Shown: piece by piece, positions 10,283 to 42,060 of the stretch
Numbering within the stretch: the first letter of the stretch is position 1
Layout of the letters: every line of letters starts with the position of its first letter
IMG/VR virus record: IMGVR_UViG_3300027749_002876
Span: 62,001 to 126,000 of that record
DNA length: 64,000 bases
Direction: 5' to 3' (one strand)
Program-made: the position numbers and the translations under genes
The notes under the pieces: model-generated
What the model was told of the DNA's origin: nothing
The model's input: the letters and a program-made list of their open reading frames with translations, nothing else
Databases searched by the model: none

Positions 10283-10437
10283 AAAATGAGTACTTTTGTA
10301 TCTCAAAAAGGTAAACTTTAGTACTCATTTTCACCTCCCAGGTGCTTCAAAATCGCTAGAGGTTTTAGGGACGCATACTGACACACTTCTATCGGAATTC
10401 GCCAAAACTTGACAATAAATTGTTTTGGGTGTATGAT
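10283..10437 (+). repeat. Non-coding element, copy A (inverted copy at 41916-42060), ending in an early promoter
   Basis: 19-nt exact core GCTTCAAAATCGCTAGAGG; about 78% identity over ~118 nt by manual alignment. Confidence 0.9.
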
Positions 10438-10467
10438 GCAGTTTTACACACACATGGAGTTAGTTAA

Positions 10468-10983
10468 ATGAGCAAAGTACTAATTGGCTTAGCAACTATA
10501 TCAGCGGTTGCAATTCTAGGAGTTCAACAATATCAACTTGCTACCATCTCAGAAGATGTAGCCGAAATCAAACAAGCCTTCATTGCACAAACCACCGAAC
10601 GTGTTTCATATAGTGAAAGTGATGAAGCATGTCTTGCTAAAAATATTTACTACGAAGCCGGTATTGAAAGTGACCATGGTAAGTATGCTGTAGCACAAGT
10701 TACACTAAACCGATTGAAGACAGGTCGTTGGGGTGATACAATTTGTAGCGTGGTCTATTCCAAAGCACAGTTTAGTTGGACATTAAAAAAGAAACTAGAA
10801 AAACCCAATGGTCAAGCATGGGCTGATAGTCAATGGATTGCTCATAGAGTATTGGGAGGTGAGCGTGTGCCTCCTCTCAGTGAAGCCATTTTTTACCATG
10901 CTGATTATGTAAGTCCGTATTGGAAGAGTAGTGTTGTAAAAATACAACAAGTTGGCCAGCATATCTTCTATACCAAAATTTGA
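10468..10983 (+). CDS. Cell-wall hydrolase (SleB/Hydrolase_2 family)
   Basis: CLAKNIYYEA, AVAQVTLNR, TICSVVY..AQFSW, FYHADYVSP.W, GQHIFY; N-terminal anchor. Confidence 0.92.
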   Translation: MSKVLIGLATISAVAILGVQQYQLATISEDVAEIKQAFIAQTTERVSYSESDEACLAKNIYYEAGIESDHGKYAVAQVTLNRLKTGRWGDTICSVVYSKAQFSWTLKKKLEKPNGQAWADSQWIAHRVLGGERVPPLSEAIFYHADYVSPYWKSSVVKIQQVGQHIFYTKI

Positions 10984-11035
10984 CAATAAATCGTTTTGGG
11001 CTTATAATAGAATCTTAAACAGTAAAGAAAAGGAC
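10980..11035 (+). promoter_or_regulatory. Early promoter cassette
   Basis: TTGACAATAAAT...TATAATAGAATCTTAAACAGTAAAGAAAAGGA. Confidence 0.9.
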
Positions 11036-11040
11036 TAGAA

Positions 11041-11313
11041 ATGACACAAGTTTATGATCGTTTGACAGAGCAGGAAAAACGTGAAGTTCGTATGTATGGC
11101 GTTACCGAAGCAGGTATGCGTGAATCTATAGAACAAAGTATTACTTTTAAATTCTCAGGTCCTGCAATGATCGCCGCTAGCCTGATGAGTGACGCCCAGG
11201 AAATGATTAATCCTGAATACGGTGATGTTGACTATATGCGAGCCGAGGATGCCCGTCAATGTCTGAATCGTGCCAAATGGGTTCTCTTTGAATATGTCAT
11301 GTCCAAAACTTGA
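11041..11313 (+). CDS. Early hypothetical protein
   Basis: Promoter and SD upstream; stop codon lies in the next -35. Confidence 0.75.
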   Translation: MTQVYDRLTEQEKREVRMYGVTEAGMRESIEQSITFKFSGPAMIAASLMSDAQEMINPEYGDVDYMRAEDARQCLNRAKWVLFEYVMSKT

Positions 11314-11365
11314 CAATAAATAGGTATTCTGCTATAATAGAATCTTAGACAGTCAAACAAAGGAT
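11310..11365 (+). promoter_or_regulatory. Early promoter cassette
   Basis: TTGACAATAAAT...TATAATAGAATCTTAGACAG...AAGGA. Confidence 0.9.
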
Positions 11366-11370
11366 ACAAA

Positions 11371-11538
11371 ATGCAAATCGCAACAGCAATCAAAGTAATA
11401 CAAAAAGATGCAGAATTCTTGGGTATGGGTTTCTTGGAAATGATGCAGTTTATTCAAAAAGACCCATTAGCACAAACACACAAAACATTAGAAGCATACA
11501 ATGTAATTAAGTTTGCAGGTGCTAAGTTTTTTGCCTAA
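11371..11538 (+). CDS. Early hypothetical protein, 55 aa (MQIATAIKVIQKDAEFLG...), not in the ORF track
   Basis: AAGGA SD; fills the gap between two promoters. Confidence 0.75.
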   Translation: MQIATAIKVIQKDAEFLGMGFLEMMQFIQKDPLAQTHKTLEAYNVIKFAGAKFFA

Positions 11539-11540
11539 AT

Positions 11541-11593
11541 TTGACAATAAATCAAATTGGGTATATAATAGAGTCTTATTCAATCAAAAGGAA
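11541..11593 (+). promoter_or_regulatory. Early promoter cassette
   Basis: TTGACAATAAAT...TATAATAGAGTCTT. Confidence 0.9.
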
Positions 11594-11598
11594 ACAAA

Positions 11599-11946: not shown

Positions 11947-11959
11947 AAGGTAATACTAA

Positions 11960-12181: not shown

Positions 12182-12190
12182 AGAAAAGGA
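12137..12190 (+). promoter_or_regulatory. Early promoter cassette
   Basis: TTGACAATAAAT...TATAATAGAATCT. Confidence 0.88.
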
Positions 12191-19037: not shown

Positions 19038-19784
19038 TCAATAAGCTAATGCAATCATTTTAGCTTCAGGAATACGAGTTTTTGTATTCTTGCTACCCAA
19101 TAAGACCACTGTTCGTATACCGCGTTCAGTGGTCAACATCATTACAATACATCCACCACTCTTAGTAATCCATCCGGTCTTACTAACAATAAACTCATAA
19201 CCATGACCGACTAAAGTGTTGGTATTGTTAAAGAATGCAGTTTTCTTTTTATTGATTGCCATTTTCATAGAATCTTTATTACTATCTTCATTGATGGTTT
19301 GATACTTGCTTGCGGCAATAACAAGCTTAACTAAATCTTCTGCGGTACTTACATTGAATACACTTAATCCAGTAGGCTCAAGATATTTTGTGTCATTCAT
19401 TTCTAATGACTTAGCCTTCTCATTCATTGCCTGTATACAGGCAAATGAGCCCATTGGGTATTTTTGACAAAGTAATGTTGCGGCTTGATTGTCTGATTTG
19501 ATGATGGCAAGACTAATTAAGTCACGCCTAGATAGTTTTTTATTATAGAGTTTTGTAGAGATAATCTCATCTAAATCTTGCTGTGCATCTAACACAACCA
19601 TAACAGTCATAAGTTTAGTAATGCTTGCAACACTACGAATATCTTTGGTGTGATTGCCATCTAATATTTTGCCATTACCGTCAGCTACTAGCCAGGACTG
19701 TGCTGTTAATGGTACTACTTGTGCATGTGCTCCAAAATGCAAGAGGCACAACAATATAAAAATTCTAAGCATTCTTTTATCCAA
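19038..19784 (-). CDS. D-Ala-D-Ala endo/carboxypeptidase (peptidase S11, PbpG-like)
   Basis: Signal peptide; ASITK (SxxK), SDN (SxN), KTG. Confidence 0.92.
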   Translation of the reverse strand: MDKRMLRIFILLCLLHFGAHAQVVPLTAQSWLVADGNGKILDGNHTKDIRSVASITKLMTVMVVLDAQQDLDEIISTKLYNKKLSRRDLISLAIIKSDNQAATLLCQKYPMGSFACIQAMNEKAKSLEMNDTKYLEPTGLSVFNVSTAEDLVKLVIAASKYQTINEDSNKDSMKMAINKKKTAFFNNTNTLVGHGYEFIVSKTGWITKSGGCIVMMLTTERGIRTVVLLGSKNTKTRIPEAKMIALAY

Positions 19785-19791
19785 TCATTCA

Positions 19792-20115
19792 TTATAGGCT
19801 CAAAGATTTCTTATTTGGCATAACTTTAAAATGTGTGCCTGTACCAACCACACAACTTAAATCACCCTTAGTAGCAATTATAGTCCAATTACCATCTATA
19901 GGGTTGACCCAAAGAGACATCGTAGATTTGGCAACATCGTCTGCTTTGCCTATTAAAATCGGAGACTCTTTATAATTTTTCTTTAGTGTATTAAATAATA
20001 CAATAGTATTGTAACATGGCAATTCAATATTTACAATCTCTTCGGACACAATAGATTCTTCAGCGTATGCTAATGAAACTAAAAGTGCCATTAGTAGGGT
20101 AATAATTGTTTTCAT
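19792..20115 (-). CDS. Secreted hypothetical protein
   Basis: Signal peptide; WTII...SCVVGTG. Confidence 0.7.
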   Translation of the reverse strand: MKTIITLLMALLVSLAYAEESIVSEEIVNIELPCYNTIVLFNTLKKNYKESPILIGKADDVAKSTMSLWVNPIDGNWTIIATKGDLSCVVGTGTHFKVMPNKKSLSL

Positions 20116-20179
20116 TAGTTATTTATATTATGGAATTTATCTACATAGTTTTACACCCATATTTCTAAATAAATACCAT

Positions 20180-20950
20180 ATGAAAACATATCGTTCTATT
20201 TTTGTGAGTGATGTACATTTGGGTACCAAAGATAGTCAGGCTGATAAGTTAAATAATTTTTTAAAACACAATAGTTGTGACACACTGTATTTGGTAGGTG
20301 ATATTATAGATGCGTGGCGTATACAACAAAACAGGTGGCGATGGAAACAAAGCCATACCAATGTGGTTCGTAGAGTATTAGGTCATGCCAAACGTGGCAC
20401 TAGAGTTGTTTATATAGCAGGTAATCATGATGAGTTTCTTAGGCCAATGATTCCATATGGATTCAGTTTTGGTCTAGTAGAGATTCATAATCAAATAGAA
20501 CACATAGGTGCAGATGGCAAACATTATCTAGTAACCCACGGGGACTTGTTTGATGGTATCACAAGACTAGCACCGTGGATAGCATTTTTAGGAGACAAAG
20601 CATATGATATCATTTTATCGCTCAATAGTAGGTTCAATTGGATACGTCATCGTTTTGGTTTTGGGTACTTTAGTCTTAGTAAATATCTTAAATCAAAAGT
20701 AAAAAAAGCAGTAGATTTTATTTTTCATTTTGAAAAGAACCTAGCTGCCTATTGTAAAAAGCGAGGGTTTGATGGTGTAATATGTGGTCACATACACCAA
20801 GCAGAAATCAAATACATTGATGGGATTCGATATATGAACGACGGTGATTGGGTAGAATCCTGTACGGCACTAGTAGAACATCATGATGGCAAGTGGGAAA
20901 TAATTACATGGACTAAACAAAATGACAAAAACGATATTGATAATCACTGA
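20180..20950 (+). CDS. PlcP-like phospholipase C (LpxH/COG2908 metallophosphoesterase family)
   Basis: YRSIFVSDVHLG, YLVGDIID.W, GNHDEFLR, THGD.FD, ICGHIH, NDGDWVESCTALVE. Confidence 0.85.
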   Translation: MKTYRSIFVSDVHLGTKDSQADKLNNFLKHNSCDTLYLVGDIIDAWRIQQNRWRWKQSHTNVVRRVLGHAKRGTRVVYIAGNHDEFLRPMIPYGFSFGLVEIHNQIEHIGADGKHYLVTHGDLFDGITRLAPWIAFLGDKAYDIILSLNSRFNWIRHRFGFGYFSLSKYLKSKVKKAVDFIFHFEKNLAAYCKKRGFDGVICGHIHQAEIKYIDGIRYMNDGDWVESCTALVEHHDGKWEIITWTKQNDKNDIDNH

Positions 20951-21941
20951 TAACTTACCGGAGCAAATAAATGGCGTGGTCACGACCTACACGAATATTG
21001 AGACATGTGCGGTTTTGGATGGTTATAAGTTTGTGGTGTTGCATCCCGGGTGGTTCAGCTACATTGATTGTCCTAGCTACAACGAAGTCAAGATTGCCTA
21101 TCCAAGGAACTTGGGCCAGAAGGTTAAGGAGATCGATCCGGATTATATCCATATCGCCACAGAAGGTCCTCTTGGTCTGTGGGGTAGAAAGTATCTGTCA
21201 CTATGTAATATTAGGCACAATACCGCTTATCATACTAAATTTCCTGAGGGTTTAAAGAAACTATTTGGCATACCTGAAAGTCTCACTTGGGTATTTGTTC
21301 GTTGGTTTCATAAGCACAGCGGTAAAGTATTGACTACTACAGACTCAATGGTTCAAGAATTACGTAAGCATGGATTCACCGGTGAAGTTGTTTCTTGGAC
21401 TAGAGGTGTTGACAGAACAATATTTGATCCATCTCTTAGAGAAGAATTACCTAGCAAGTATTTGCTATGTGTTAGTCGTGTTAGCAAAGAAAAAAACCTA
21501 GAAGATTTTTTTAAATTAGATTATTTCGGGTATCAAAAGATCATGGTAGGTGATGGCCCCATGTTAGAGACCTACAAAAAGAAATACCCAGATGTACACT
21601 TTACTGGATTTAAAACAGGAGTAGATTTAGCTAGGTATTATGCTAATGCTGATGTGTTTGTGTTTCCTAGTCGTTGGGAAACATTTGGTTTAGTAATGAT
21701 TGAATCAATGGCGTGTGGTACCCCTGTCGCGGCTTATCCTTGTCAAGGCCCCGTAGATGTTATAGATGAAGGTGTTACTGGTTGTATGAACAATAATTTA
21801 AAACAGGCTGTGACTGATGCATTAGCGTTAAAAAGAGAAGTAGTACTGAGTGGGAGCAACAGATGGACTTGGCAAAAGGCATGGGAAATATTTAGAGATA
21901 ATCTAGTCCCTGTCACATCATTGTCACATAATATGCGTTAA
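20922..21941 (+). CDS. GT4 glycosyltransferase (Agt-like diacylglycerol glycosyltransferase)
   Basis: TD..P.Q.NGVV.T, HIATEGPLG, YHTKFPE, RVSKEKN, FPS..ETFGLV..ESMACGTPV. Confidence 0.85.
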   Translation: MTKTILIITDNLPEQINGVVTTYTNIETCAVLDGYKFVVLHPGWFSYIDCPSYNEVKIAYPRNLGQKVKEIDPDYIHIATEGPLGLWGRKYLSLCNIRHNTAYHTKFPEGLKKLFGIPESLTWVFVRWFHKHSGKVLTTTDSMVQELRKHGFTGEVVSWTRGVDRTIFDPSLREELPSKYLLCVSRVSKEKNLEDFFKLDYFGYQKIMVGDGPMLETYKKKYPDVHFTGFKTGVDLARYYANADVFVFPSRWETFGLVMIESMACGTPVAAYPCQGPVDVIDEGVTGCMNNNLKQAVTDALALKREVVLSGSNRWTWQKAWEIFRDNLVPVTSLSHNMR

Positions 21942-21991
21942 ATAATTATGTGCCATGGTGGCACACAATTAACACCCACAAGGAGAAACAC

Positions 21992-22645
21992 ATGAGATTA
22001 GATGACTTAGCCGTAAGATTAGTAGCAGTAGAAGCCAAATTAGCATCACTAACTGGAACATCAGTTAACACAGACAATGCAAAAAACATTGATGAACTAG
22101 ACGCAAGACTATCAGTAGTTGAAGCACAAATCGATCAGTTAGTAGCTGTAAAAACTCAAGAGCATGTTGACGCTATTGTTGCCGCAGCCGCACAAGCAGT
22201 TGAAAGCATACAAGCCGCAGTTGCAGAAGTAGTTGCACTTTCTCCAAGTGCTGACCACGCAGAAGCCGCTGACATCGTTACTGACGTTGTTACAGCACAA
22301 GCAGAAGCAGATGCAGTTGATCACCCAGAAGTTGCTGACATTATTTCAGCCGCAGTTCAAGCAGTTGTTGCCGCAGAGCCAGAAGTTGTTACAGATCCAG
22401 TAGCAATCACAGCCGCTATCATGGAAGCAGTTGCTGAAATGCCAGCTCCGGCCCCAGAAGTTGCAGAAGAAGTTGCAGCCGCAGTTGCTGAAGTTATTGC
22501 AGCCGCAACAGGTGAAGAAGTTGCTCCAGAAATACACGCTGACATCGTTGAAGCAGTTGCAGCTCCTTCAAATCAAGCACTAGATGATATCGAAGCACGT
22601 TTGGAAGTTGCAGAAGCTAAAGTTGATACATTATTAGGAAAATAA
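21992..22645 (+). CDS. Very acidic Ala/Val/Glu-rich protein with three coiled-coil motifs
   Basis: AGGAG SD before ATG at 21992; LD(D/E)(L/I)..RL...EA repeats. Confidence 0.75.
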   Translation: MRLDDLAVRLVAVEAKLASLTGTSVNTDNAKNIDELDARLSVVEAQIDQLVAVKTQEHVDAIVAAAAQAVESIQAAVAEVVALSPSADHAEAADIVTDVVTAQAEADAVDHPEVADIISAAVQAVVAAEPEVVTDPVAITAAIMEAVAEMPAPAPEVAEEVAAAVAEVIAAATGEEVAPEIHADIVEAVAAPSNQALDDIEARLEVAEAKVDTLLGK

Positions 22646-22685
22646 TAGCTAGCATTTGATGTTGGTTTTCAACCTTTTTTAAATC

Positions 22686-22752
22686 GGGCACAAGATAGAG
22701 TGCCGCTGGATTCTCGTAACCAGTACTAAGGGTTCGGTAGGGCTCTTTTTTA
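22686..22752 (+). ncRNA. Candidate structured RNA: two hairpins plus a terminator
   Basis: GGCAC/GTGCC, GCTGG/CCAGT, then AGGGTTC-GGTA-GGGCTCT and a T-tract. Confidence 0.5.
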
Positions 22753-22802
22753 TTGGATAGTAGTAAGACAATTTACCTACTACCTAGCATAAATACAATA
22801 CT

Positions 22803-23621
22803 ATGAAAAAACTACTACTATTATTATTTGTATTTATTAGTTCAGTTGTCAACGCACAATTACCAACTAGTAATGTACCGCTACCCGCTGATATTGCCGC
22901 AATTAAGAAAGCAAACGTTCTTATTGTAGCAATGACCAAAAAAGATAACCCTCCCTTCTTCAGTGGTAGCGAGGATGATATCCATGGTCTTGACGTTGAA
23001 ATTGCACGAAGAATTGGAGTAATGCTTGGAGTTCCTGTACAGTTTAGACGAGATGCAGAAAGTTTTGCAGAAGTTGTAGAACAAGTTCGAGACGGGCGTG
23101 CCGATGTTGCAGTTAGCAAATTATCTGTAACCGGCCCTAGATTGCAAGTAGTTAGATTCAGTGATCCTTACATCAAACTAAGACAAAGTTTAGTTATCAA
23201 TCGATTATGGCTAAGCCAAAATAGTCAAGGTCGTGAAGTATATCAAGTCATTAGAAATTTCAATGGTAAAATAAGTTTCATTCGCAACTCAAGCTATGAC
23301 ACATTTGCACGTACTAATTTCCCTAATGCCACGTTTCTTCCGGAAGATAAATGGGATGTGATTATTGACAAAGTTACACGTGGTGATATTGCAGCCGCTT
23401 ATCGTGATGAATTTGAGATTAAGAAAATTGCTTTTGAAAAACCAGAAGCCGCAATCAGTACAAAGAGTATCACAATCAGTGACAGCGTGGATAACATTGC
23501 TGTTGCGGTAAATCCTAAATCATTACAATTGTTAAGTATTATTAATTATGTTATTAAAAATGAATACAACAATATTGACACTAAGAAGTTGATGGACCGC
23601 TACAAAGCTGAAAAGAAATAA
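22803..23621 (+). CDS. Amino-acid ABC-type periplasmic binding protein (SBP family 3)
   Basis: Signal peptide; PPF, GLDVEIA..I...LGV, D.A.S.LS.T..R...V.FS.PY. Confidence 0.9.
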   Translation: MKKLLLLLFVFISSVVNAQLPTSNVPLPADIAAIKKANVLIVAMTKKDNPPFFSGSEDDIHGLDVEIARRIGVMLGVPVQFRRDAESFAEVVEQVRDGRADVAVSKLSVTGPRLQVVRFSDPYIKLRQSLVINRLWLSQNSQGREVYQVIRNFNGKISFIRNSSYDTFARTNFPNATFLPEDKWDVIIDKVTRGDIAAAYRDEFEIKKIAFEKPEAAISTKSITISDSVDNIAVAVNPKSLQLLSIINYVIKNEYNNIDTKKLMDRYKAEKK

Positions 23622-23630
23622 GGATATAAA

Positions 23631-24905
23631 ATGAAATTTAATTTAAAAAACTTCTTATCTAGTCCGTGGACTATTTTAGGATCAATTATACTTGGAGTAC
23701 TGGCAGGAATATATGCTCCTGCACAAAGTATGAACTTTGAAAGTGTTGGAGGAATTTACATTAGCTTGCTTAAAGTTGTGGTAATACCTTTCTTACTTGC
23801 AACTATTTTGGTTGGTGTTATCAGCCTACTACAAAAAGAAGGCAGTGCCGCAATGATACGCAAAATTATCATTGGCTTTGTTGGCAGTATGTTCTTGGCC
23901 GCAGTTATTGGTGTTGGTACTGTTGCACTGACCGGCAGCGAAATGACTCCTGCAAAACAAGCACAACTTGGTGCTATTGTCAACGATAAAGAATCTGGTA
24001 GTGATCTTAACATAACACTAAAAGAACCAATGCCTGCCGCACCGCACGTTGACCCAATGCAAATGGCACAGAAGTTTATTCCAGAAAATATTTTTAATAC
24101 ACTAGCCGCTGGCGAGAGTTTAAAGATTGTTATCTTTTGTTTAATCTTTGGTATTGCATTAGGTAACTTAAAAACTACTGGTCAAGAAATGCTAGTGGAT
24201 ATATTAAAGAGCGTACAACAGGCCAGTATCAGTATTTTTAAATTCTTAAACTACTTTCTACCGTTTGCACTATTGGCAATGATTAGCAGCCAAGTTGGTA
24301 AGGTTGGAGTTGGTATTTTCTTGACCATGGTTGAGTTTATCATGCAACAGGCCATTGGTGGATTGCTTGTTGTTATTGCTGGTACTATTGTTATTTGGCA
24401 ACGTTCAGGACTAAGCTTAATGACTGTTATTAAAGAAACTAAGGAAACATTAATTGTGGCTGTTAGTTCACGCAGTAGTTTAGCATGTATTCCTTATGCA
24501 CAAGAAGCACTGCACAAATTACATTTTGATAGAACTGGTGTAGAATTAACCGTGCCATTAAGTTTTACAGTTAACCGTATTGGTAGTATTGTTTATTACG
24601 CAATTGCCACAGTATTTATTGCCAACATCTACGGTGCACCTATGGGAGTAACTGGTTTGCTGGTTGTATTGTTTGGTAGTATTTTAGCTGGATTAGCAAG
24701 TGCTGGTACAACAGGTATCTTAACAGTTGCTACAGTAGCAGTCGTTTGTGATTTATTAAAACTACCAAGTGAAGCGGTATTAGTATTATTAATTGCAGTT
24801 GATCCGTTAATGGACATGATTCGCACAGCAAGTCATGTACACGGCAATGTGGCAGTAACAGCATTTGTCTGCGACAAAGAGATAACAGATAATGGACAAA
24901 CTTAA
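23631..24905 (+). CDS. Dicarboxylate/amino-acid:cation symporter (GltP/SDF family)
   Basis: LLK..VIP, IPENIF, SSRSS, PL..TVN, AVDPLMDM.RT..HV.GN. Confidence 0.92.
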   Translation: MKFNLKNFLSSPWTILGSIILGVLAGIYAPAQSMNFESVGGIYISLLKVVVIPFLLATILVGVISLLQKEGSAAMIRKIIIGFVGSMFLAAVIGVGTVALTGSEMTPAKQAQLGAIVNDKESGSDLNITLKEPMPAAPHVDPMQMAQKFIPENIFNTLAAGESLKIVIFCLIFGIALGNLKTTGQEMLVDILKSVQQASISIFKFLNYFLPFALLAMISSQVGKVGVGIFLTMVEFIMQQAIGGLLVVIAGTIVIWQRSGLSLMTVIKETKETLIVAVSSRSSLACIPYAQEALHKLHFDRTGVELTVPLSFTVNRIGSIVYYAIATVFIANIYGAPMGVTGLLVVLFGSILAGLASAGTTGILTVATVAVVCDLLKLPSEAVLVLLIAVDPLMDMIRTASHVHGNVAVTAFVCDKEITDNGQT

Positions 24906-25506
24906 AGATTTTCTTTTAAGTTTATTAACCTATATAGGCGAGAGTCCATTTCGTTTATTCACAGTTGTATTCCTTTGCATAATTGGATTTGGCGGCTGGA
25001 TTGTCTATTCAGAAAAAGATGCCTTTATGGCCAGCTATCGTGCCCAACAAGCACTGCCTCGAATGAATGGTGAGTATGAAAAAGCCACTAACTTTATACT
25101 TAAAAACAGCCAAGCAGAATTAATAGCCATATTTGAAGTCAATACTTTATTAAACACTAGAAAATTGGTATACTTTGCCACACGCAAAGGCGGACAAGAA
25201 AAGGGGATGTATGGCACTGATGTTGGCTTGTTGACCAAAAACTACGACAACAATAACGATGTGATTTCCATGATGTCAGGCAAGATACCTTGCCAAACTT
25301 ACGAGAAACCTCAAAGTATGATGGGATTCATTTATGTTGAAAAAGGCGTCAAGTGGATGTGTCGTATCAGCGTTCCAGCAGAACCTGGCATATTTATTGG
25401 ACAAATATCAGTAGGTTGGACTGAGGTACCTATAGATAAAATGCCCGTCGATACACAACAAACTGTAATGATTGTGGCTAGCGGCTTACTGTATAACAAG
25501 AAATGA
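24892..25506 (+). CDS. Putative T4-t/T5-type holin (one TM plus periplasmic GAF-like domain)
   Basis: Single TM near residues 22-39; C-terminal C...P....IGQISVGW resembles T5 holin C.P....AGYIGIAW. Confidence 0.5.
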   Translation: MDKLKDFLLSLLTYIGESPFRLFTVVFLCIIGFGGWIVYSEKDAFMASYRAQQALPRMNGEYEKATNFILKNSQAELIAIFEVNTLLNTRKLVYFATRKGGQEKGMYGTDVGLLTKNYDNNNDVISMMSGKIPCQTYEKPQSMMGFIYVEKGVKWMCRISVPAEPGIFIGQISVGWTEVPIDKMPVDTQQTVMIVASGLLYNKK

Positions 25507-25564
25507 GACTTCCCTCTGTCATGGCTGGTTTCATTTTTTTAATTATTTTAATAATTATATTTTT

Positions 25565-30415: not shown

Positions 30416-33400
30416 ATGACAATAACAGTTAAAATTACAGAATTATCAGACATAGGCGCAAACTTAGCAAGTTCTACAGTCGTGCCGGTAGTCAATATGG
30501 CGGGTATACCAATCACACAAAAAACAAATATAGGCAATATTGCTAATATTATATTAGAAGGTGCCGGTGTTGATTATCCAGAAGCTACAGTAGCATTACT
30601 TGCACAAACAGTTAGCAATGCGGCTCAACCAAACATTACAAGTGTTGGTACATTAACTAGTTTAAGTGTCACTGGTAATACTGCATTGGGCGCTGTAGGT
30701 AATGTTAAAATTACCGGTGGTAGTAGTGGACAAATATTATCTACCGACGGCGCGGGTAATTTAAGTTGGACAAACGATACAACAACATACGGTAATAGCA
30801 ATGTTGCAACATTACTAAGTGCATTTGGTTCTAATATAATTAGTACGACAGGTAATATTACCGGTGGCAATTTAGTAACCGGTGGACAAGTCGTAGCAAG
30901 CGGTAACGTATCATCGGGAACTGGACTCAGTACCGGTGGCTTTTTAAGTGTAGATGGCACTGCTGATCTGCATGATACCTCAGTGACTGGTAACTTATCG
31001 GCTACAGGTAATGTCACTGCTAATGCGTTTATCGGTGATGGTAGTCAACTTACCAATATACCATCAGCCGGAACTTCAGGAGAAGTACAAGTAAACTGGC
31101 TGGGTAGTTTTAGTAATCAAGGTGGTACTCCCGGTGATACCTATAGTACACTACAGTTTGACAGCAATGGTATGCCAACATTGAACGGCACTAATGCATA
31201 TCAGCAACGGGTTGATTACTCACCTTATTTACAAGTTCTTGCACCTAGAGTAGAGAGTACTGACTTTGGAATTGTTGCTGGGCCCGCTATTCAAATAACT
31301 GGATATGCAGACAACGTTTTTTATAACACACCCTGTAGTGCTTACTTGTCAGTACAAGATCAGGCCAATGCTACACAGCAATGGGACTTTGGTATCCTGG
31401 GCAATGGCAGCAACAATTTTAGCATACAAGACAGAACTGGCAATCAGGTCTGGAGTTTTGGCACCGACGGCAACATAAACATACCTGGACTGGCATTCAA
31501 CATCAACTATGCCAATAGCGAATCAGCCACACTGAGCCCATCAGTGGGAAACTCAGGCGCAGTACAGTTTAATTGGCAAGGATCGTTAAGCAACCAGGGT
31601 GGTACTCCAGGCGATACCTACAGTACTCTACAGTTTGACAGCAACGGAATGCCCACTCTGGATGGCACCACAGCATATCAACAGCGTATTGACTACTCAC
31701 CCTATCTGCAGGTACTGGCTCCTAGAGTAGAAAGCACAGACTTTGGTATTGTAGCTGGTCCTGGACTAACAGTAGTTGGATATGATGACAACTACAACAT
31801 ACCTCGCAGTGCTTACTTGTCAGTACAAGATCAAGCCAATGCTACACAACAATGGGACTTTGGTATTCTTGGTAACGGTAATAATAATTTTGTTGTTAGT
31901 GATAGAACTAACAGCAATCAATGGACATTTGGTACAGATGGTAACACAACATTTCCCGATGGTACTGTAATACAAGGTGATGGCAGTGGTATATACTACC
32001 CAACAAACGACGGATGGAATTTACATCGCCCTGACAATTTAGTATGGATTGGTTCAGGAACCAATGTTGCCTATATTGATACATATAGTCCTAATGTTAG
32101 TGTTAGAATAAGAACTCTCGGTGATCCAGAAGAGGGCCCAGGATATGATTGGATTTTTGATCCTACTGGTAACTTAACACTACCAACAAATACATTTAGC
32201 ATTAATTATGCTAACGGACAACAAGTTCAGTTAGGTGGTGGCGCCAATTTAGGTAATTTTGTATTCCCTAATCCAACTAGCAACACAAGTACAATAACTG
32301 TTAATGACGGTAGTGATATTGTTATTAATCCAACATACGGTGGTACTAGTCCAGCATACATCAATGTTCCGGGTAATATCAATGGCCCAACTACTGAGCC
32401 ACTACAAATTTATAATGGTTATTTTGCGGGTAATGCTAATGCAGCCGCAGTATCAATAGGTGCTGATGTACTTAAAGGTATTACTATATTTGGTGATGGT
32501 AGTGTTGTAGCATCTAATACTGTAACTGTCCCAGCTAGTGATAGTGGTAGTATCATATTCAGCAGTGACGGTACATCAAATAATGGTAGTCTAAAAGTTG
32601 ATAGTGGTTATAACATGACTGTTAGTGCCAATAGCAACTTCTATGTTAAACAAAATGGTAGTGATAGACTTGGTATAACAAATACTAATACTGATTTGAT
32701 GGCAGCTAGTAATGTTGTTATTCATGCAAACAAAGCAGGCACAGAAAAGAATTGGATATTCAGTAGTGATGGTAATTTAAGCACACCGGGAGAACTTATC
32801 ATATACGGTGGTACTACTATTGATTTCCATCAACAAGTTGGTAATATCACTTGGGGTACAAATTACATGGCATTCAGTCAGTATGGTAGAGTTGAAACCA
32901 ATATTGATTTCTTTGCTAATGCTAATACTATCGGCGCACAATACCTTAAAGGTGATGGTAGTAACATCAGCAATATCAATGCTAGTAATATCACCAATGC
33001 ATATAACGATTCAAATGTAATTAGTTTATTGAGTGATTTAGGTGGTAATGGAATTGGTAATGTAGGTAATATAGATATATCAGGCAACATCAATTTTACT
33101 AACAACTCAGCAGTACAACAAAGTTCAATTGTAGTAAACCCATTCCGTACAATAGAGACTGTAACATTATCTGCAAATTCACAGAACAATGCTACTTTAC
33201 TAACACTAGAAGATACTGGCAATGCAAATTTAAGAGCATGGCAAGATATCAATCTTAATACATATACACAAACAACCAACAACAATTTTAAATTTGATGC
33301 TAGCGGTAACTTAACTATTCCTGGCAATATCAGTGGTAGTGGTGCTAACGGGTTAATGATAAGTTCAAACGGTAATGTAACTCTTAATAGCAAAGGTGCT

Positions 33401-34039
33401 CAGTTTATATTTGATGCCCCGGCAGGTAATTTCTATCTTCCTAACCCAGGTGGTGCAATTGTTTTTGCTGATAGTTCAGTGCAAAATACAGCATACACCG
33501 GTAGTATTGCTGGTGCAAATGTAACTGGTCAAGTAGGTAATGCCTTAGTAGCAGGTACTGTATATACTAATGCACAACCAAACATCACAAGTGTTGGCAC
33601 ACTATCAAGCCTATCAGTTACTGGTAATGTCTCAGCTAACAACTTTACTGGTAACGGTAGCCAACTTACTGGCATTCCCACACAAACAACAGGTAATTGG
33701 GAACTTGTACCCGGAGTTAACACAGTGAATATTAGCGTACCTATAAACGGCACGTACTCTATATGGGTTAAAGGGAATATTCCAAATGGTATTGTTACAT
33801 ATACTGCTACCGCGGTTGTGACTAATACCAATGTACCGGTACTAGGTACTAGTTATGGTTGGTATTATGCAGCCGGCAATGCATTAGTACTTACATCGAT
33901 ACCTACACAATTTGTTGGCACATTAAACAATATCAGTAATGCTGTAGTTGCAACTACAACTGCCAATGTGTTTACATTTGGTATTACTAACAATAGCGGT
34001 GCCAACGCAGTTGTAAATTGGGGTTACACTAAATTATAA
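30416..34039 (+). CDS. Tail fibre/adhesin-like protein
   Basis: 1207 aa, Gly/Asn/Thr-rich; AQPNITSVGTL and W.FG.DGN repeats; internal duplication. Confidence 0.75.
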   Translation: MTITVKITELSDIGANLASSTVVPVVNMAGIPITQKTNIGNIANIILEGAGVDYPEATVALLAQTVSNAAQPNITSVGTLTSLSVTGNTALGAVGNVKITGGSSGQILSTDGAGNLSWTNDTTTYGNSNVATLLSAFGSNIISTTGNITGGNLVTGGQVVASGNVSSGTGLSTGGFLSVDGTADLHDTSVTGNLSATGNVTANAFIGDGSQLTNIPSAGTSGEVQVNWLGSFSNQGGTPGDTYSTLQFDSNGMPTLNGTNAYQQRVDYSPYLQVLAPRVESTDFGIVAGPAIQITGYADNVFYNTPCSAYLSVQDQANATQQWDFGILGNGSNNFSIQDRTGNQVWSFGTDGNINIPGLAFNINYANSESATLSPSVGNSGAVQFNWQGSLSNQGGTPGDTYSTLQFDSNGMPTLDGTTAYQQRIDYSPYLQVLAPRVESTDFGIVAGPGLTVVGYDDNYNIPRSAYLSVQDQANATQQWDFGILGNGNNNFVVSDRTNSNQWTFGTDGNTTFPDGTVIQGDGSGIYYPTNDGWNLHRPDNLVWIGSGTNVAYIDTYSPNVSVRIRTLGDPEEGPGYDWIFDPTGNLTLPTNTFSINYANGQQVQLGGGANLGNFVFPNPTSNTSTITVNDGSDIVINPTYGGTSPAYINVPGNINGPTTEPLQIYNGYFAGNANAAAVSIGADVLKGITIFGDGSVVASNTVTVPASDSGSIIFSSDGTSNNGSLKVDSGYNMTVSANSNFYVKQNGSDRLGITNTNTDLMAASNVVIHANKAGTEKNWIFSSDGNLSTPGELIIYGGTTIDFHQQVGNITWGTNYMAFSQYGRVETNIDFFANANTIGAQYLKGDGSNISNINASNITNAYNDSNVISLLSDLGGNGIGNVGNIDISGNINFTNNSAVQQSSIVVNPFRTIETVTLSANSQNNATLLTLEDTGNANLRAWQDINLNTYTQTTNNNFKFDASGNLTIPGNISGSGANGLMISSNGNVTLNSKGAQFIFDAPAGNFYLPNPGGAIVFADSSVQNTAYTGSIAGANVTGQVGNALVAGTVYTNAQPNITSVGTLSSLSVTGNVSANNFTGNGSQLTGIPTQTTGNWELVPGVNTVNISVPINGTYSIWVKGNIPNGIVTYTATAVVTNTNVPVLGTSYGWYYAAGNALVLTSIPTQFVGTLNNISNAVVATTTANVFTFGITNNSGANAVVNWGYTKL

Positions 34040-34053
34040 ATAAAGGATGACTA

Positions 34054-34899
34054 ATGGCATTGAAACAAGATCCACGAACAATAATAGATACAAGTCAGGA
34101 TCATACCTTCAACCCACCTGTCACCAAAAAAGTAATATCTAGGACACTTGACGACAAATTTAATTTAGTGTGGAAGGCTGATAAACTAGATACTAGAGAT
34201 TACAGATATCAATTAACACAAAAAATTAATCCTGATATAGTTGACCTAAGAAGTTATTGTAGTCCAATTGAAAATCAAGGTAATCTAGGTAGCTGTACCG
34301 GACAATCTATTGCCGGTGCAATAGAACTACTAAACAAACGCAATGGTAAACCAACTGATGTTAGTAGATTGTTTATATACTATTATGAACGAGTATTGCT
34401 AGGAACAGTTAACTATGATAGTGGTGCATACATTCGTGATGGCATTAAAGCAACTAATAAGTATGGGGTAAGTTTAGAATCATACTGGCCATATGATATT
34501 AGAAAATTTAAACAAGAACCAATCAATGAAGCAAAGAGTGACGCATTAAATCGTAAGGTAACACGATACGAAAGAGTGGAAGACTTTAATGGATGTATTG
34601 ACGCATTAAGTAATGGTTATTCAGTTATCATAGGCTTCAGTGTGTATGATAGCTTTATGTCAATGAATGTTGCCAAGACCGGTATGATGCCTTATCCAAA
34701 CACAAAGCGTGAAAAACTATTAGGTGGACATGCAGTGTTACTTGTTGGATACGACAAAAACAAAAAAGTATTCATTGCAAGAAACAGTTGGGGAACAGGT
34801 TGGGGCGACAGAGGTTACTTCTATATGCCGTTTCAAGTTATTCAGAATACAAATATGAGTAGCGACTTCTGGATTATAAAGTCAGTTTCAAACCCATAA
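34054..34899 (+). CDS. Papain-like C1 cysteine peptidase
   Basis: NQG.LGSCT, GGHAVLLVGY, RNSWG..WG..GYF. Confidence 0.92.
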   Translation: MALKQDPRTIIDTSQDHTFNPPVTKKVISRTLDDKFNLVWKADKLDTRDYRYQLTQKINPDIVDLRSYCSPIENQGNLGSCTGQSIAGAIELLNKRNGKPTDVSRLFIYYYERVLLGTVNYDSGAYIRDGIKATNKYGVSLESYWPYDIRKFKQEPINEAKSDALNRKVTRYERVEDFNGCIDALSNGYSVIIGFSVYDSFMSMNVAKTGMMPYPNTKREKLLGGHAVLLVGYDKNKKVFIARNSWGTGWGDRGYFYMPFQVIQNTNMSSDFWIIKSVSNP

Positions 34900-34922
34900 A
34901 AAAGCCCCTTAAGGGGCTTTTT
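34897..34922. terminator. Bidirectional terminator where the + and - gene blocks converge
   Basis: AAAAAAGCCCC-TTAA-GGGGCTTTTT. Confidence 0.9.
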
Positions 34923-35134
34923 TATTTCATCTTCTCTAGCATGTAAGTTGTGAATTTGTTTTCACACATTGCCGGAATCTCAACGAACGGATCCTCTAGA
35001 AAGAATGGACAACCTGTTTTCCATTTACCATTCTTTTTAAAGAATTGTAATTCTAACAAATCTTTTTTATCTGCTGGATTGAATTCTCTACGAGGATTAA
35101 ATGATCGGCGAAAGGTAGATAGATTCATGTTCAT
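34922..35134 (-). CDS. Hypothetical protein
   Basis: FNP....DL...F.....W..GCPF.LE.P. Confidence 0.65.
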   Translation of the reverse strand: MNMNLSTFRRSFNPRREFNPADKKDLLELQFFKKNGKWKTGCPFFLEDPFVEIPAMCENKFTTYMLEKMK

Positions 35135-39816: not shown

Positions 39817-40134
39817 TCACTGATTACAGGTTCGTGTACGAGTAATAGTGCCATCTGAGTTTTGTGTTTCAGTCCATGGGGTACAGTTTTGATTTTGTTG
39901 AACTATAACAGGCTGTTGTTGCTGTACAACTACTGGAGGTTGCTGAACAACTACTGGTCGATTATAGATATCATAAATTACTGCTCCAGCTAGTGCGCCG
40001 CCGAGTACAGGTCCCCAGCCCCAACCACCGCCACGATAACCACCGTGACCATAATGTCCGTGATGACCATAATGCTGTGCTGATGCTGAACCAGCTAGTA
40101 AAATCAATGATATTGCTAATATAACTTTTTTCAT
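39817..40134 (-). CDS. Secreted Gly/His/Gln-rich protein
   Basis: Signal peptide; AGGAG SD. Confidence 0.7.
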   Translation of the reverse strand: MKKVILAISLILLAGSASAQHYGHHGHYGHGGYRGGGWGWGPVLGGALAGAVIYDIYNRPVVVQQPPVVVQQQQPVIVQQNQNCTPWTETQNSDGTITRTRTCNQ

Positions 40135-40166
40135 AACTATCTCCTGTGTTATACTTATATAACGTG

Positions 40167-40700
40167 TCAGACCAATGATTCGTTGACACGGTGACTGTCG
40201 ATTGCCTCTTGTAAAACAAACTCTATCATCTTATTTAGTGTAATGTCACGCTTGTGCGCTTCCTTGGCTAAATGAAGTATTAGGTCATCATCCAAATCAA
40301 CTTCTATTTGTACACGGGTATCCCAATACTCACCGTTGAACATTGCTTTTGCTTTTTCTAGGAAATCTTCTTCTACATCCAGATCAATCCACTTAACATC
40401 ATCCCATGCCTGATCGGGATCGACATTGCGTTCTGTTGCTTCATTAAGGTAAGCATCTTTAAACAAAGCATTTGTCCAACGATAGGGCTTATCATAGCGT
40501 TCGTCATTGGGCCAAGCATCACGTTTAAGTGAGGCGTCAGCCTGGTATACAGTTTGATCTACAGTACTATACAATACACTAACGTGACCATAGTCACTTT
40601 CATAGTCTAAGAATCGTGCATCAGGAAAGCATTGCCATTGATATTCAGAACCACCGGTGATTTGGTGATTCATTGCTTCGTTAATCTGGTTCAATTTCAT
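40167..40700 (-). CDS. Hypothetical protein with C-terminal ribbon-helix-helix-like segment
   Basis: EAHKRDITLNKMIE..L. Confidence 0.7.
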   Translation of the reverse strand: MKLNQINEAMNHQITGGSEYQWQCFPDARFLDYESDYGHVSVLYSTVDQTVYQADASLKRDAWPNDERYDKPYRWTNALFKDAYLNEATERNVDPDQAWDDVKWIDLDVEEDFLEKAKAMFNGEYWDTRVQIEVDLDDDLILHLAKEAHKRDITLNKMIEFVLQEAIDSHRVNESLV

Positions 40701-40908
40701 GTGTGTCTTTCAAAATTTTAATACATTGTTTTTTGATATGTTCCGGAATAGAATGTAACCGTAATAATATCTCACATTTATAACTAACAGTAATAGTTGG
40801 TTCTTCGATTTCAGGTTCTTCTAAAATCATCCAACCAAAGATCACTATTGCTATGATTATAGCAAGAATTCTCTTAACTGTCAACTCATATTTTTCCCAA
40901 AGACTCAT
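40681..40908 (-). CDS. Small membrane protein
   Basis: TM segment; ATAAATA-5-ATG. Confidence 0.55.
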   Translation of the reverse strand: MSLWEKYELTVKRILAIIIAIVIFGWMILEEPEIEEPTITVSYKCEILLRLHSIPEHIKKQCIKILKDTHEIEPD

Positions 40909-40942
40909 ATCGTTATTTATGAGTCCTCTGAGATATTGCTAA

Positions 40943-41236
40943 TTAATCACCCGAATCAATTTGATATCTGTCACCGCAATGTTTACAAGTGTAGCCGGTC
41001 AAGCATCTGCCGTCTGATTTGGTTGTGTAATGATGGTTGCACGGTGCACCTTCGGCATTCAATCGTACTTCACCCTTAGGGGATCCATACATATACTGTC
41101 CACCGCAGTTATGACAACCACGTTGTGTCTTATCTTTATTCCAAGAATAAGCTTTTTCTTGTTCCGTCAAATTGACATAACAAGTCCCGTTACATACAGG
41201 ACATACTCCATATCCATCTCTCATACTAAAATCCAT
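40943..41236 (-). CDS. Zinc-finger protein
   Basis: CPVCNG, CHNCGG, C.H, CKHCG. Confidence 0.7.
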   Translation of the reverse strand: MDFSMRDGYGVCPVCNGTCYVNLTEQEKAYSWNKDKTQRGCHNCGGQYMYGSPKGEVRLNAEGAPCNHHYTTKSDGRCLTGYTCKHCGDRYQIDSGD

Positions 41237-41308
41237 CCTTTAAAATTATTGCCAGACCCATCACAATGACGGGTAACATTACGATAATCAAGTTAGTAAT
41301 TGCTTGCA

Positions 41309-41647
41309 TTATTTTACTCCAAATGTGTTCAATGCTGGTTGCAATGTGTTAATCAATAGTGTTTCACGCTCATGAGCAGGGCGCTTGCCACGCACAACTT
41401 CCAACTTACCGAACACAAAACGCTCGGCACCACGCTCACGCAAAGCACGAGACAGGCCCCAGTTTTTGTTCTCAGTCATAGCCCGTTGCATATGTTTTTG
41501 CATACGACGGCGTAGTGTCAAAAACACATTGCCTTTGTATGAAAGAGCAGTCAAACCAATGTAGTACTCAAGTGTTACAGTATCTTGGATAAAGTAGATA
41601 ACTTGATTTCTATCAGTTCTACGCTTGCGGACGATTTTCGAGTTCAT
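41309..41647 (-). CDS. GIY-YIG-like nuclease domain protein, probably leaderless
   Basis: VIY.I......YYIG.T...R...H...E...I....P.LN; promoter at 41654-41682. Confidence 0.7.
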   Translation of the reverse strand: MNSKIVRKRRTDRNQVIYFIQDTVTLEYYIGLTALSYKGNVFLTLRRRMQKHMQRAMTENKNWGLSRALRERGAERFVFGKLEVVRGKRPAHERETLLINTLQPALNTFGVK

Positions 41648-41684
41648 AAGTGTATTATATACCCAAATTGATTTATTGTCAACC

Positions 41685-41909
41685 TCAGAATGCTCGGTAC
41701 AATCCAAGCATACAAATAACAACTGATACGATATTCACTACCATTTGTGCATTGTTGCGAACCCGGTAAGCCCATGTAAGAAAGAATACAGTTCCAAAAC
41801 TGAATGCTATAATGTTATATGGATCCATATTGCCCATCGAGTTCAGGATATGACCTGCTATGATGAAAACTACCCCTGTCCACTGAATGATGTCATTTGT
41901 TTTATTCAT
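41685..41909 (-). CDS. Small membrane protein, probably leaderless
   Basis: ATG 6 nt after TATAAT. Confidence 0.65.
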   Translation of the reverse strand: MNKTNDIIQWTGVVFIIAGHILNSMGNMDPYNIIAFSFGTVFFLTWAYRVRNNAQMVVNIVSVVICMLGLYRAF

Positions 41910-41915
41910 AGATGA

Positions 41916-42060
41916 ATTATACACTAAAGCCCATTTATTGTCAACTGTTGGTAAAATCGCTAGAAGTGTATCAGAGTGCGTTCCTGAATCCTCTAGCGAT
42001 TTTGAAGCCCCTGAGGGGGCAAAAGTAGTACTTTTGTTTCTTAAATATGTAGTACTAAAG
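41916..42060 (-). repeat. Non-coding element, copy B (inverted relative to copy A), ending in an early promoter
   Basis: AAAATCGCTAGA...TCTAGCGATTTT 12-bp inverted repeat at 41953-42003; GCCCC-TGA-GGGGGC. Confidence 0.9.

What the first reader, a model, noticed from the sequence alone, without database searches (positions are those of the whole stretch)
10283..42060. A ~120-bp non-coding element in two inverted copies brackets a 31.7-kb domain and heads both early-promoter arrays
Seen: 10320-10437 (+) and 41916-42032 (-) align at about 78% (92/118 by hand), with an exact 19-nt core GCTTCAAAATCGCTAGAGG. Conservation extends ~90 bp upstream of the -35, which none of the other early promoters share. 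Each copy sits directly before the first promoter of an inward-pointing array, and the arrays meet at the bidirectional terminator at 34897-34922. Both copies are rich in dyads. Copy A has AAAATGAGTACT...AGTACTCATTTT. Copy B has AAAATCGCTAGA-27nt-TCTAGCGATTTT and GCCCC/GGGGC. Each copy has two AGTACT palindromes about 24-30 bp apart. Inference: a cis-acting boundary or organiser, such as a replication origin, an invertase/recombination site that flips the early domain, a staged-injection or packaging signal, or an activator-loading site. I know of no described element with this arrangement.
Basis: partly seen in the sequence, partly recalled or inferred. Interest (0 to 1): 0.85.

Follow-up and report, generated by a model that had tools for sequence, protein, structure and literature searches.

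The report
Stem-loop plus early-promoter cassette, two copies
The two inverted 120-bp copies are real and conserved in related uncultivated freshwater phages. They look like a known kind of phage regulatory cassette: stem-loops that end the upstream gene's transcript, joined to a strong early promoter, where gene modules get swapped by recombination. They do not look like a new origin, invertase site or packaging signal.

Summary
Copy A (10283-10437, +) and copy B (42060-41916, -) are about 79% alike and share an exact 19-mer found nowhere else in the window.

The element occurs in well over 100 fetched loci from freshwater viral and metagenome contigs, in 53 distinct variants, and in no bacterial genome. 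It always follows the stop codon of a co-directional gene.

- **Anatomy:** three sense-strand hairpins, then a consensus sigma-70 promoter. H0 is built from the AGTACT boxes, H1 is GC-rich, and H2 is long and usually followed by a T-run.
- **Conservation:** stems and boxes (0.91-0.97) exceed synonymous sites (0.82). Loops (0.78) do not.
- **Module junction:** upstream and downstream genes are shuffled around it, and one copy is a chimera with its crossover inside the core. Copy A's right end is replaced by DNA that ends a gene in another phage.
- **Not obligatory:** five of six hydrolase-gene relatives at 72-79% identity lack it at site A. Copy number and orientation vary between genomes.
- **No inversion isomer** was seen in any fetched locus.

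Best reading: a terminator/stem-loop plus early-promoter cassette, working like the PeSL cassettes of T4-type phages. This version is unusually long and low in copy number. The terminator function, the AGTACT boxes and any DNA-level role are untested.

The parts
10254..10274 (+). Canonical intrinsic terminator (AGCCCC-AAAA-GGGGCT plus T5) ending the upstream GATase-like gene 9582-10232, just before copy A
   Evidence: Sequence; the same hairpin is listed by the terminator scan on the opposite strand; fold (L121 is identical to the window)
10283..10331 (+). Copy A, hairpin H0: 12-bp inverted repeat AAAATGAGTACT / AGTACTCATTTT with a 25-nt loop. Each arm carries an AGTACT palindrome.
   Evidence: Both arms changed together in relatives: GAATACT/AGTATTC in L029 and L154, GTGTACT/AGTACAC in L160
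10332..10344 (+). Copy A, hairpin H1: CACCT-CCC-AGGTG, a re-registered version of B's GCCCC-CTCA-GGGGC
   Evidence: -4.3 kcal/mol; changes on both arms in A, L042, L038 and L043
10344..10362 (+). Copy A, exact 19-nt core shared with copy B. It is the 5' arm of H2.
10354..10394 (+). Copy A, remnant of hairpin H2/H3. The lower stem and T-run are gone. The right end, CGGAATTCGCCAAAAC, matches the 3' end of a coding gene in L238.
   Evidence: -10.2 kcal/mol against -8.4 +/- 2.5 for shuffles
10409..10437 (+). Copy A promoter: TTGACA, 17 nt, TATGAT, with the extended TTGACAATAAAT. It drives the cell-wall hydrolase gene 10468-10983.
42027..42056 (-). Copy B, H0 region: two AGTACT boxes (42051-42056 and 42027-42032) starting 6 nt after the stop codon of gene X (42063-42374)
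42007..42020 (-). Copy B, hairpin H1: GCCCC-CTCA-GGGGC
   Evidence: -9.9 kcal/mol
41953..42003 (-). Copy B, hairpin H2 with inner helix H3. AAAATCGCTAGAGG pairs with CTTCTAGCGATTTT (14 pairs). TCAGG 41987-41983 pairs with TCTGA 41975-41971. The stem ends in UUUU here; most relatives have UUUUU.
   Evidence: -22.1 kcal/mol; 95% of cells paired across 50 variants
41916..41944 (-). Copy B promoter: TTGACA, 17 nt, TATAAT (12 of 12). The ATG at 41909 lies 6 nt after the -10, so the mRNA for a 74-aa DUF6552-like membrane protein is probably leaderless.
41309..41682 (-). Ordinary promoter (41682-41654) plus a 109-aa GIY-YIG gene. In most relatives this gene follows the element directly.
34896..34925 (.). 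Bidirectional terminator where the + and - gene runs converge

Best explanation
Each copy is a composite intergenic regulatory cassette. The first ~90 nt is the 3' untranslated end of the upstream, co-directional gene. It folds in the sense RNA into three hairpins (H0, H1, H2). In most versions H2 ends in a U-run and would act as an intrinsic terminator or attenuator, and as a 3'-end stabiliser. A consensus host-type (sigma-70) early promoter follows directly and restarts transcription for a run of small early genes. The cassette therefore insulates an early array from upstream transcription.

Because ~120 bp are near-identical between related phages and between sites in one genome, the cassette is also a preferred site of homologous recombination. 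Gene modules on either side are exchanged there.

Shown here: the anatomy, conservation, position after co-directional stop codons, flank shuffling and chimeric copies. Inferred: termination, promoter activity and timing.
For: 1. **Position.** In 17 of 19 contexts with enough upstream sequence, the longest open frame upstream is co-directional and ends within about 60 nt of the element.
2. **Fold.** The sense strand folds far better than shuffles: B z = -6.3, A z = -2.8. The antisense strand gives -4.0 and -0.6. Intact H2 versions reach -22 to -30 kcal/mol against about -9 for shuffles, and are followed by TTTT(T)GCC.
3. **Pairing.** Across 50 variants, 90.5% of cells pair, against 35-56% when partners are slid. 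G-U pairs that work only in the sense RNA are common (110 cells). A-C mismatches are rare (15 cells). Gene X shows no C/T mutational bias (19 C/T against 24 A/G polymorphic columns).
4. **Conservation.** In a sample chosen through gene X, not through the element, stems, boxes and the -35 score 0.91-0.97. The H2 loop scores 0.78 and the box spacer 0.83. Third codon positions score 0.82.
5. **Contrast with ordinary promoters.** Of the 18 other promoters folded, only the one at 40884 has a stable stem-loop just upstream of the -35. In most, the upstream gene's coding sequence runs up to the -35.
6. **Module junction.** There are 10 upstream and 10 downstream contexts. U0/U1 with D0/D1 occur in all four combinations. 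L150 has the left half of L125 and the right half of L140. Copy A's right end equals the C-terminal codons of a gene in L238. The DUF6552 gene in the window is flanked by two promoter copies, while most relatives have GIY-YIG directly after the element.
7. **Analogue.** PeSL cassettes were shown by experiment to terminate and to promote transcription, and to recombine (PMC2839356).
Against: - Covariation is not statistically significant. Only 2 pairs change on both sides, and the shuffle controls are not exceeded.
- Three hairpins with near-invariant sequence are more than a terminator needs.
- H1 is followed by UUCAAAAU, which is not a U-run.
- A whole sub-lineage, including window copy A, lacks the H2 lower stem and the T-run but keeps the rest.
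- The AGTACT palindrome survives in a distant relative (L117) where the H1 and H2 sequences are replaced. This hints at a sequence-specific reader.
- There are no transcript data.
Confidence: 0.6

Rival explanations
1. The element is a DNA-level control region. The AGTACT palindromes and the AAAATCGCTAGA/TCTAGCGATTTT dyad are operators for a phage or host regulator that turns the first promoter of each array on or off. This need not exclude the terminator reading.
For: Each H0 arm is itself a palindrome, which a hairpin does not require. The proximal box AAAGTACTCATTTT is among the best conserved parts (0.956). An AGTACT-centred 14-bp palindrome persists after gene X in L117, although the H1 and H2 sequences are replaced. 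The 19-nt core is identical in A and B although A has lost its pairing partner.
Against: Box spacing differs, 31 bp in A and 24 bp in B, so the boxes are out of helical phase. The arms co-vary so as to keep complementarity in L029, L154 and L160, which base pairing explains and a binding site does not. Neither the 12-mer box nor AGTACT is enriched elsewhere in the window. No candidate regulator was identified. Recombination explains the isolated core identity in A.
Confidence: 0.15
2. The element is a structured non-coding RNA with a function of its own, such as a processing site, an antitermination RNA or a 3'-UTR-derived small RNA.
For: Three conserved sense-strand hairpins with z = -6.3. 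Substitutions are wobble-tolerant in the sense strand. H2 is an interrupted stem of about 19 bp, the size of an RNase III substrate (established knowledge of T7 early mRNA processing sites).
Against: No Rfam family matches at E up to 10. No promoter is evident upstream of H0. The element is dispensable at site A in five relatives. The A sub-lineage has lost half of H2.
Confidence: 0.1
3. The element is a replication origin, priming signal, packaging site or injection-stop site that marks a physical genome domain.
For: Promoter-linked origins exist in T4 and T7 (established knowledge). The DNA is rich in hairpins. An inward-pointing pair 31.6-33.5 kb apart recurs in two genomes.
Against: Copy number is 2-3 and orientation varies, with direct copies in contig 3300046786_000203. 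The element is absent at site A in five relatives. No iterons or AT-rich unwinding stretch are present; GC is 0.40-0.42. The skew turning point lies at 35 kb, not at the copies. The element lies in the interior of a 524-kb contig.
Confidence: 0.06
4. The two copies are crossover sites of a site-specific inversion system that flips the 31.7-kb segment.
For: Inverted orientation with a shared exact 19-mer.
Against: No hybrid arrangement was seen in any fetched locus from viral and metagenome collections. No recombinase family appeared among the 50 window proteins scanned, though that set is incomplete. The only chimera found (L150) joins two A-type copies from different phages, not A with B.
Confidence: 0.02
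5. The element is a passive relic. A promoter-bearing segment was duplicated and is kept alike by recombination or by co-conversion with the mobile GIY-YIG gene. The upstream 90 nt have no function.
For: A GIY-YIG nuclease gene is the commonest neighbour. Recombination inside the element is documented. The element is optional at site A.
Against: Conservation is patterned: stems and boxes exceed synonymous sites while loops sit at the synonymous level. Hitch-hiking would not produce this. Hairpins are kept through changes on both arms. Diverged 'type C' versions keep the hairpin and T-run with other sequences.
Confidence: 0.07

Closest known systems
PeSL (promoter-early stem-loop) cassettes of T4-type phages (Arbiol et al. 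2010, PMC2839356; Comeau et al. 2014, PMC4122927)
   Same: [quoted passage not shown] It has a consensus sigma-70 early promoter, an adjacent stable stem-loop often built from G and C runs (H1 is GCCCC/GGGGC), and about 100 bp of conservation. It sits among small orphan genes and acts as a crossover point that swaps, inserts or deletes gene modules and yields chimeric cassettes.
   Different: All stem-loops lie upstream of the -35. There are three, spanning about 90 nt, and they include AGTACT palindromes. Only 2-3 full copies occur per genome, while most of the promoters in the arrays lack a stem-loop. The sequence is far more uniform between phages. The host phage is an uncultivated freshwater phage on a 524-kb contig, and a T4-type affiliation was not established. 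Termination and mini-circle formation are untested here.
Rho-independent (intrinsic) terminators, including the bidirectional A-tract/stem/T-tract type
   Same: H2 in most copies is a stable hairpin flanked by an A-tract and a T-tract, directly after a co-directional gene.
   Different: The hairpin is long (about 47 nt), with an internal loop and a 7-8 nt apical loop. It is preceded by two further hairpins. The T-tract is absent in the copy A sub-lineage.
Morons and conserved boundary sequences at mosaic junctions of lambdoid phages
   Same: Genes carried with their own promoter and terminator. Conserved intergenic sequence marks module boundaries.
   Different: Here the conserved regulatory sequence itself appears to be the recombination substrate, as in PeSLs.
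RNase III processing hairpins between T7 early genes
   Same: Interrupted hairpins of about 20 bp between early genes.
   Different: The element lies upstream of a promoter rather than inside a polycistronic early transcript. No evidence of cleavage.

Membership tests
PeSL-type terminator/promoter cassette | Sigma-70-like early promoter consensus | tested here: met
   TTGACA, 17 nt, TATAAT, 12 of 12 in B and 11 of 12 in A. Sequence only; activity not measured.
PeSL-type terminator/promoter cassette | Adjacent sequence able to form a stable stem-loop | tested here: met
   H0, H1 and H2; z = -6.3 for B; 90.5% of cells paired over 50 variants
PeSL-type terminator/promoter cassette | The stem-loop terminates or attenuates upstream transcription | not testable with these tools
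   Needs a reporter assay or transcript 3'-end mapping. Indirect support only: position after co-directional stops and a T-run after H2.
PeSL-type terminator/promoter cassette | Occupies the whole gap between the upstream stop codon and the downstream start | tested here: met
   The first AGTACT box of copy B starts 6 nt after the gene X stop codon. The cassette ends at the ATG of the next gene.
PeSL-type terminator/promoter cassette | Many copies flanking small orphan genes in plastic regions | tested here: inconclusive
   The promoter part occurs 17 times at up to 1 mismatch, on the strand that matches the local genes. The full stem-loop version occurs only twice in 64 kb.
PeSL-type terminator/promoter cassette | Serves as a recombination point for modular shuffling | tested here: met
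   All four flank combinations occur. L150 is a chimera. Copy A's right end is replaced. The DUF6552 gene is flanked by promoter repeats. Evidence is comparative, not experimental.
PeSL-type terminator/promoter cassette | Host phage is a T4-type myovirus | not tested
   No structural or core replication genes lie in the window. The ClpX-like protein's best phage hits are jumbo phages such as Atu_ph07 at about 50% identity.
Intrinsic terminator | GC-containing hairpin followed directly by a U-rich tract | tested here: inconclusive
   Met in B (UUUU) and in most relatives (UUUUU). Not met in copy A. The tool's own terminator scan misses it because the loop exceeds 8 nt.
Site-specific DNA inversion system (Hin/Gin type) | Both orientations of the bracketed segment occur in a population | tested here: not met
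   No hybrid junction in any fetched locus. Assemblies show majority forms only.
Site-specific DNA inversion system (Hin/Gin type) | Recombinase gene next to or within the segment | tested here: inconclusive
   None among the 50 proteins scanned. Many small ORFs were not scanned.
Known RNA families (Rfam 15) | Match to a curated covariance model | tested here: not met
   No hit overlaps H1 or H2, even at E up to 10. Two weak hits (E 3.6-7.4, far below gathering score) centre on the terminator before copy A and reach its first box.
Replication origin | Iterons, initiator boxes, an AT-rich unwinding region, or a skew switch at the site | tested here: not met
   No tandem or iterated repeats in the element. 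GC is 0.40-0.42. The skew maximum lies at 35 kb. Promoter-type origins cannot be excluded from sequence.

The most novel reading that the evidence does not exclude
The three-hairpin module with its AGTACT palindromes and near-invariant 19-nt core is more than a terminator. It could be a dedicated cis-element, in RNA or extruded DNA, read by a phage factor. Examples are a switch that gates read-through into the early arrays late in infection, or a promoter-coupled R-loop origin. It would be specific to an uncultivated lineage of very large freshwater phages.
Probability: 0.12. Interest if true: 0.6.

Novelty: new variant of a known kind. Interest (0 to 1): 0.33.

Why it matters
If the reading is right, the terminator-plus-early-promoter recombination cassette described for T4-type coliphages and vibriophages also operates in an unrelated-looking, uncultivated freshwater phage lineage with contigs up to 524 kb. 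That lineage is rich in transporter and cell-wall genes.

This gives a concrete mechanism for how such phages gain and lose small early genes. It also supplies a compact DNA marker of 19-22 nt for recovering the lineage from metagenomes. It does not open a new class of element.

Tried and rejected
- **Phage database:** megablast of both flanks against 50,697 phage records found nothing. tblastn of the GIY-YIG protein found nothing.
- **Rfam** at E up to 10: two weak matches (E 3.6 and 7.4, far below gathering score) touch copy A's first box but centre on the upstream terminator; nothing covers H1, H2 or the core.
- **Bacterial and archaeal genomes:** 20-mer scan of 185,579 species, 0 hits.
- **Formal covariation** (RNAalifold and pair counts): consistent with the structure but not significant. 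Variation is too low in these close relatives.
- **Operator motif elsewhere:** AGTACT and AGTACTCATTTT are not enriched elsewhere in the window.
- **T4-style late promoter TATAAATA:** not enriched overall, at 9 found against 10.4 expected. Four or five sites sit just upstream of gene starts. Left as a side note.
- **A decayed H2 is explained by a canonical terminator just upstream:** only the window lineage has a clear one. L141 and L127 share that context by descent, so this is one case, not three.
- **Copy A's H2 decayed by point mutation:** replaced by the finding that its right end is foreign sequence joined by recombination.
- **Recombinase search** within the domain: none found, but the search was incomplete.
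- **A third, diverged copy in the window** at the position where L013 has one (about 36.15 kb): absent.

Full report
**1. The observation**

The two copies exist as described. Copy A (10283-10437, +) and copy B (42060-41916, -) align at about 79%. They share the exact 19-mer GCTTCAAAATCGCTAGAGG, which has no third match in the window even with three mismatches; 0.01 are expected by chance. A covariance model built from relatives, run without filters, finds only these two full copies. All weaker hits are the promoter part alone.

The dyads and the four AGTACT sites are present. The other TTGACAATAAAT promoters share nothing upstream of about -5 from the -35, and in most of them the upstream gene's coding sequence runs up to the -35. 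The convergent terminator at 34896-34925 is real.

Three corrections apply. AGTACT is not enriched in the window. The same promoter type recurs at 58-60 kb, outside the bracket. The genes outside each copy run the same way as those inside, so the copies are not at strand switches.

**2. Where the window comes from**

The window is bases 62001-126000 of a single 524,565-bp metagenome contig. This record is Ga0209084_1000001, also listed as IMGVR_UViG_3300027749_002876. No deposited phage is close.

The window carries 27 tRNA genes. It has a ClpX-like gene whose best phage relatives are jumbo phages. It also has two TctC-type receptors, a dicarboxylate/amino-acid symporter, a solute-binding protein, an Asp/Glu racemase, an S11 carboxypeptidase, a dCMP deaminase and a papain-like protease. 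It is an uncultivated large freshwater phage.

**3. Distribution**

The 19-mer is found in 37 viral-collection stretches and 39 metagenome stretches. A pattern taken from the other end of the element finds 78. A profile search gives 53 distinct variants. No bacterial or archaeal genome has the core.

Loci were also fetched through the protein of gene X (window 42063-42374), independently of the element.
- 33 of the 35 loci, at 83% identity or more, carry the element directly after the stop codon.
- One has a diverged copy 1.2 kb further on.
- The 52% relative L117 has other AT-rich palindromes there, including AGTTAGTACTAACT. It keeps the same promoter and GIY-YIG gene.

Loci were fetched through the hydrolase gene downstream of copy A in the same way. 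Five relatives at 72-75% identity have no element, and the upstream gene runs into the promoter. The 79% relative L160 has a diverged 'type C' version.

**4. Anatomy**

The sense strand folds into three hairpins, followed by the promoter.
- **H0** comes from the AGTACT boxes. In A-type copies it is a 12-bp inverted repeat.
- **H1** is GCCCC-CTCA-GGGGC.
- **H2** pairs AAAATCGCTAGAGG with CTTCTAGCGATTTT, 14 pairs in all. It has an inner 5-bp helix and is followed by TTTT(T)GCC.
- **The promoter** follows directly.

In the sample chosen through gene X, mean pairwise identity is 0.925, 0.955 and 0.816 at codon positions 1, 2 and 3. In the element, boxes, stems and the -35 reach 0.91-0.97. The H2 loop (0.78) and the spacer between boxes (0.83) sit at the synonymous level.

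Over 50 variants, 90.5% of cells pair, against 35-56% with slid partners. Only two pairs change on both sides, and the shuffle controls are not exceeded. Covariation is therefore not significant.

Supporting detail:
- G-U pairs that work only in the sense RNA are frequent (110 cells), while A-C is rare (15 cells). Gene X shows no C/T bias.
- H0 arms change together in L029 and L154 (G-C to A-U) and in L160 (A-U to U-A).
- H1 keeps a hairpin through changes on both arms, with shifting register, in copy A, L042, L038 and L043.
- Type C copies (L013:6551, L116:4525, L160) keep a hairpin and T-run made of different sequence.

In 17 of 19 contexts the longest upstream open frame is co-directional and ends within about 60 nt of the element.

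**5. The element as a junction**

Ten upstream and ten downstream sequence contexts surround the element. Contexts U0/U1 and D0/D1 occur in all four combinations.

L001 and L030 are collinear with the window from copy A inward, but unrelated to it outside. L013 is collinear with 42.8 to 34.9 kb.

L150 carries the left half of L125 and the right half of L140, so a crossover lies inside the core or loop.

Copy A's H2 is no better than shuffles (-10.2 against -8.4 +/- 2.5 kcal/mol). Its right end, CGGAATTCGCCAAAAC plus the promoter, equals the last codons (PEFAKI-stop) of a 90-aa gene in L238. In L238 no element is present. Copy A is therefore a recombinant, which explains why the 19-mer stands as an island of identity.

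In the window a DUF6552-like gene sits between the element's promoter and a second promoter that drives the GIY-YIG gene. In most relatives GIY-YIG follows the element directly. That is the pattern expected from insertion between repeated promoters.

**6. Arrangement**

A 90.9-kb relative has an inward-pointing pair 33.5 kb apart plus a third, diverged direct copy. A 52.5-kb contig has two direct copies 14.8 kb apart. The 524-kb contig has a further B-like copy near 430.2 kb. The inverted pair is thus recurrent but not fixed.

No contig shows an A/B hybrid that an inversion would create.

**7. Interpretation**

The best-supported reading is a stem-loop/terminator plus early-promoter cassette that ends one transcription unit, starts the next, and serves as a recombination site. 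This is how PeSL cassettes of T4-type phages work. Their stem-loops terminate as strongly as rrnB T1, their promoters are very strong, and recombination between them was shown directly (PMC2839356; PMC4122927).

The differences are real. This version has three hairpins, all upstream of the -35. It carries AGTACT palindromes, has a low copy number and is highly uniform in sequence. Termination, promoter activity and timing are inferences.

Three features remain unexplained by a plain terminator: the persistence of AGTACT in L117, the weak tail of H1, and the sub-lineage without a T-run.

**8. Verdict**

It is a new variant of a known kind, of moderate to low interest.

Noticed in passing
L045 and L088 (contig Ga0209084_1000001, 420,968-433,209) against window 39,500-60,200: The same 524-kb contig holds a second, diverged copy (about 45-95% amino-acid identity, with indels) of the tRNA / gene X / element / GIY-YIG region. 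It lies in the opposite orientation, about 326 kb away. No second hydrolase homologue from that contig appeared among the 80 best hits. It is either a large paralogous segment or an assembly chimera of two co-occurring strains.
   Followed up: partly
41916-41907 and 41654-41645 (- strand); also L117:3413-3430: The DUF6552-like gene and the GIY-YIG gene both start exactly 6 nt after the TATAAT -10 and have no Shine-Dalgarno sequence. This implies leaderless mRNAs. The arrangement is kept in the distant relative L117.
   Followed up: partly
20120-20127(-), 34035-34042(+), 42812-42819(-), 46398-46405(-), 50220-50227(+): TATAAATA, the T4 late-promoter motif, is not enriched overall. Even so, 4-5 of its 9 sites lie 5-60 nt upstream of gene starts, including the operon that ends at copy B. 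This may be a late promoter type.
   Followed up: partly
53,293-63,157 (- strand): 27 tRNA genes are interspersed with early-type promoters at 58.1, 59.9 and 60.1 kb.
   Followed up: no
19038-26290 and 45511-50207: A cluster of host-like metabolic and envelope genes: two TctC-type receptors, a DAACS-family symporter, an SBP_bac_3 binding protein, an Asp/Glu racemase, an S11 D-Ala-D-Ala carboxypeptidase, a glycosyltransferase and two metallophosphoesterases. TctC receptors are typical of Burkholderiales, which hints at the host.
   Followed up: partly
L023:8191-8260: A deletion variant. The promoter spacer of the element is fused directly into the middle of the DUF6552-like gene, which removes the -10 and the gene's start.
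   Followed up: no
L013:6551-6677, L116:4525-4644, L160:2334-2428: A diverged 'type C' sub-family of the element shares CGCTAGGACCGAT and its own hairpin plus T-run. In L013 it lies with an extra gene where the window (about 36,156) has only an ordinary promoter.
   Followed up: partly
6660-9563 and 30416-34039: Two large proteins (967 and 1207 aa) have internal repeats and match no family. The first has short Ala/Pro/Lys-rich repeats. The second has a 255-nt unit repeated at 31061 and 31538.
   Followed up: no
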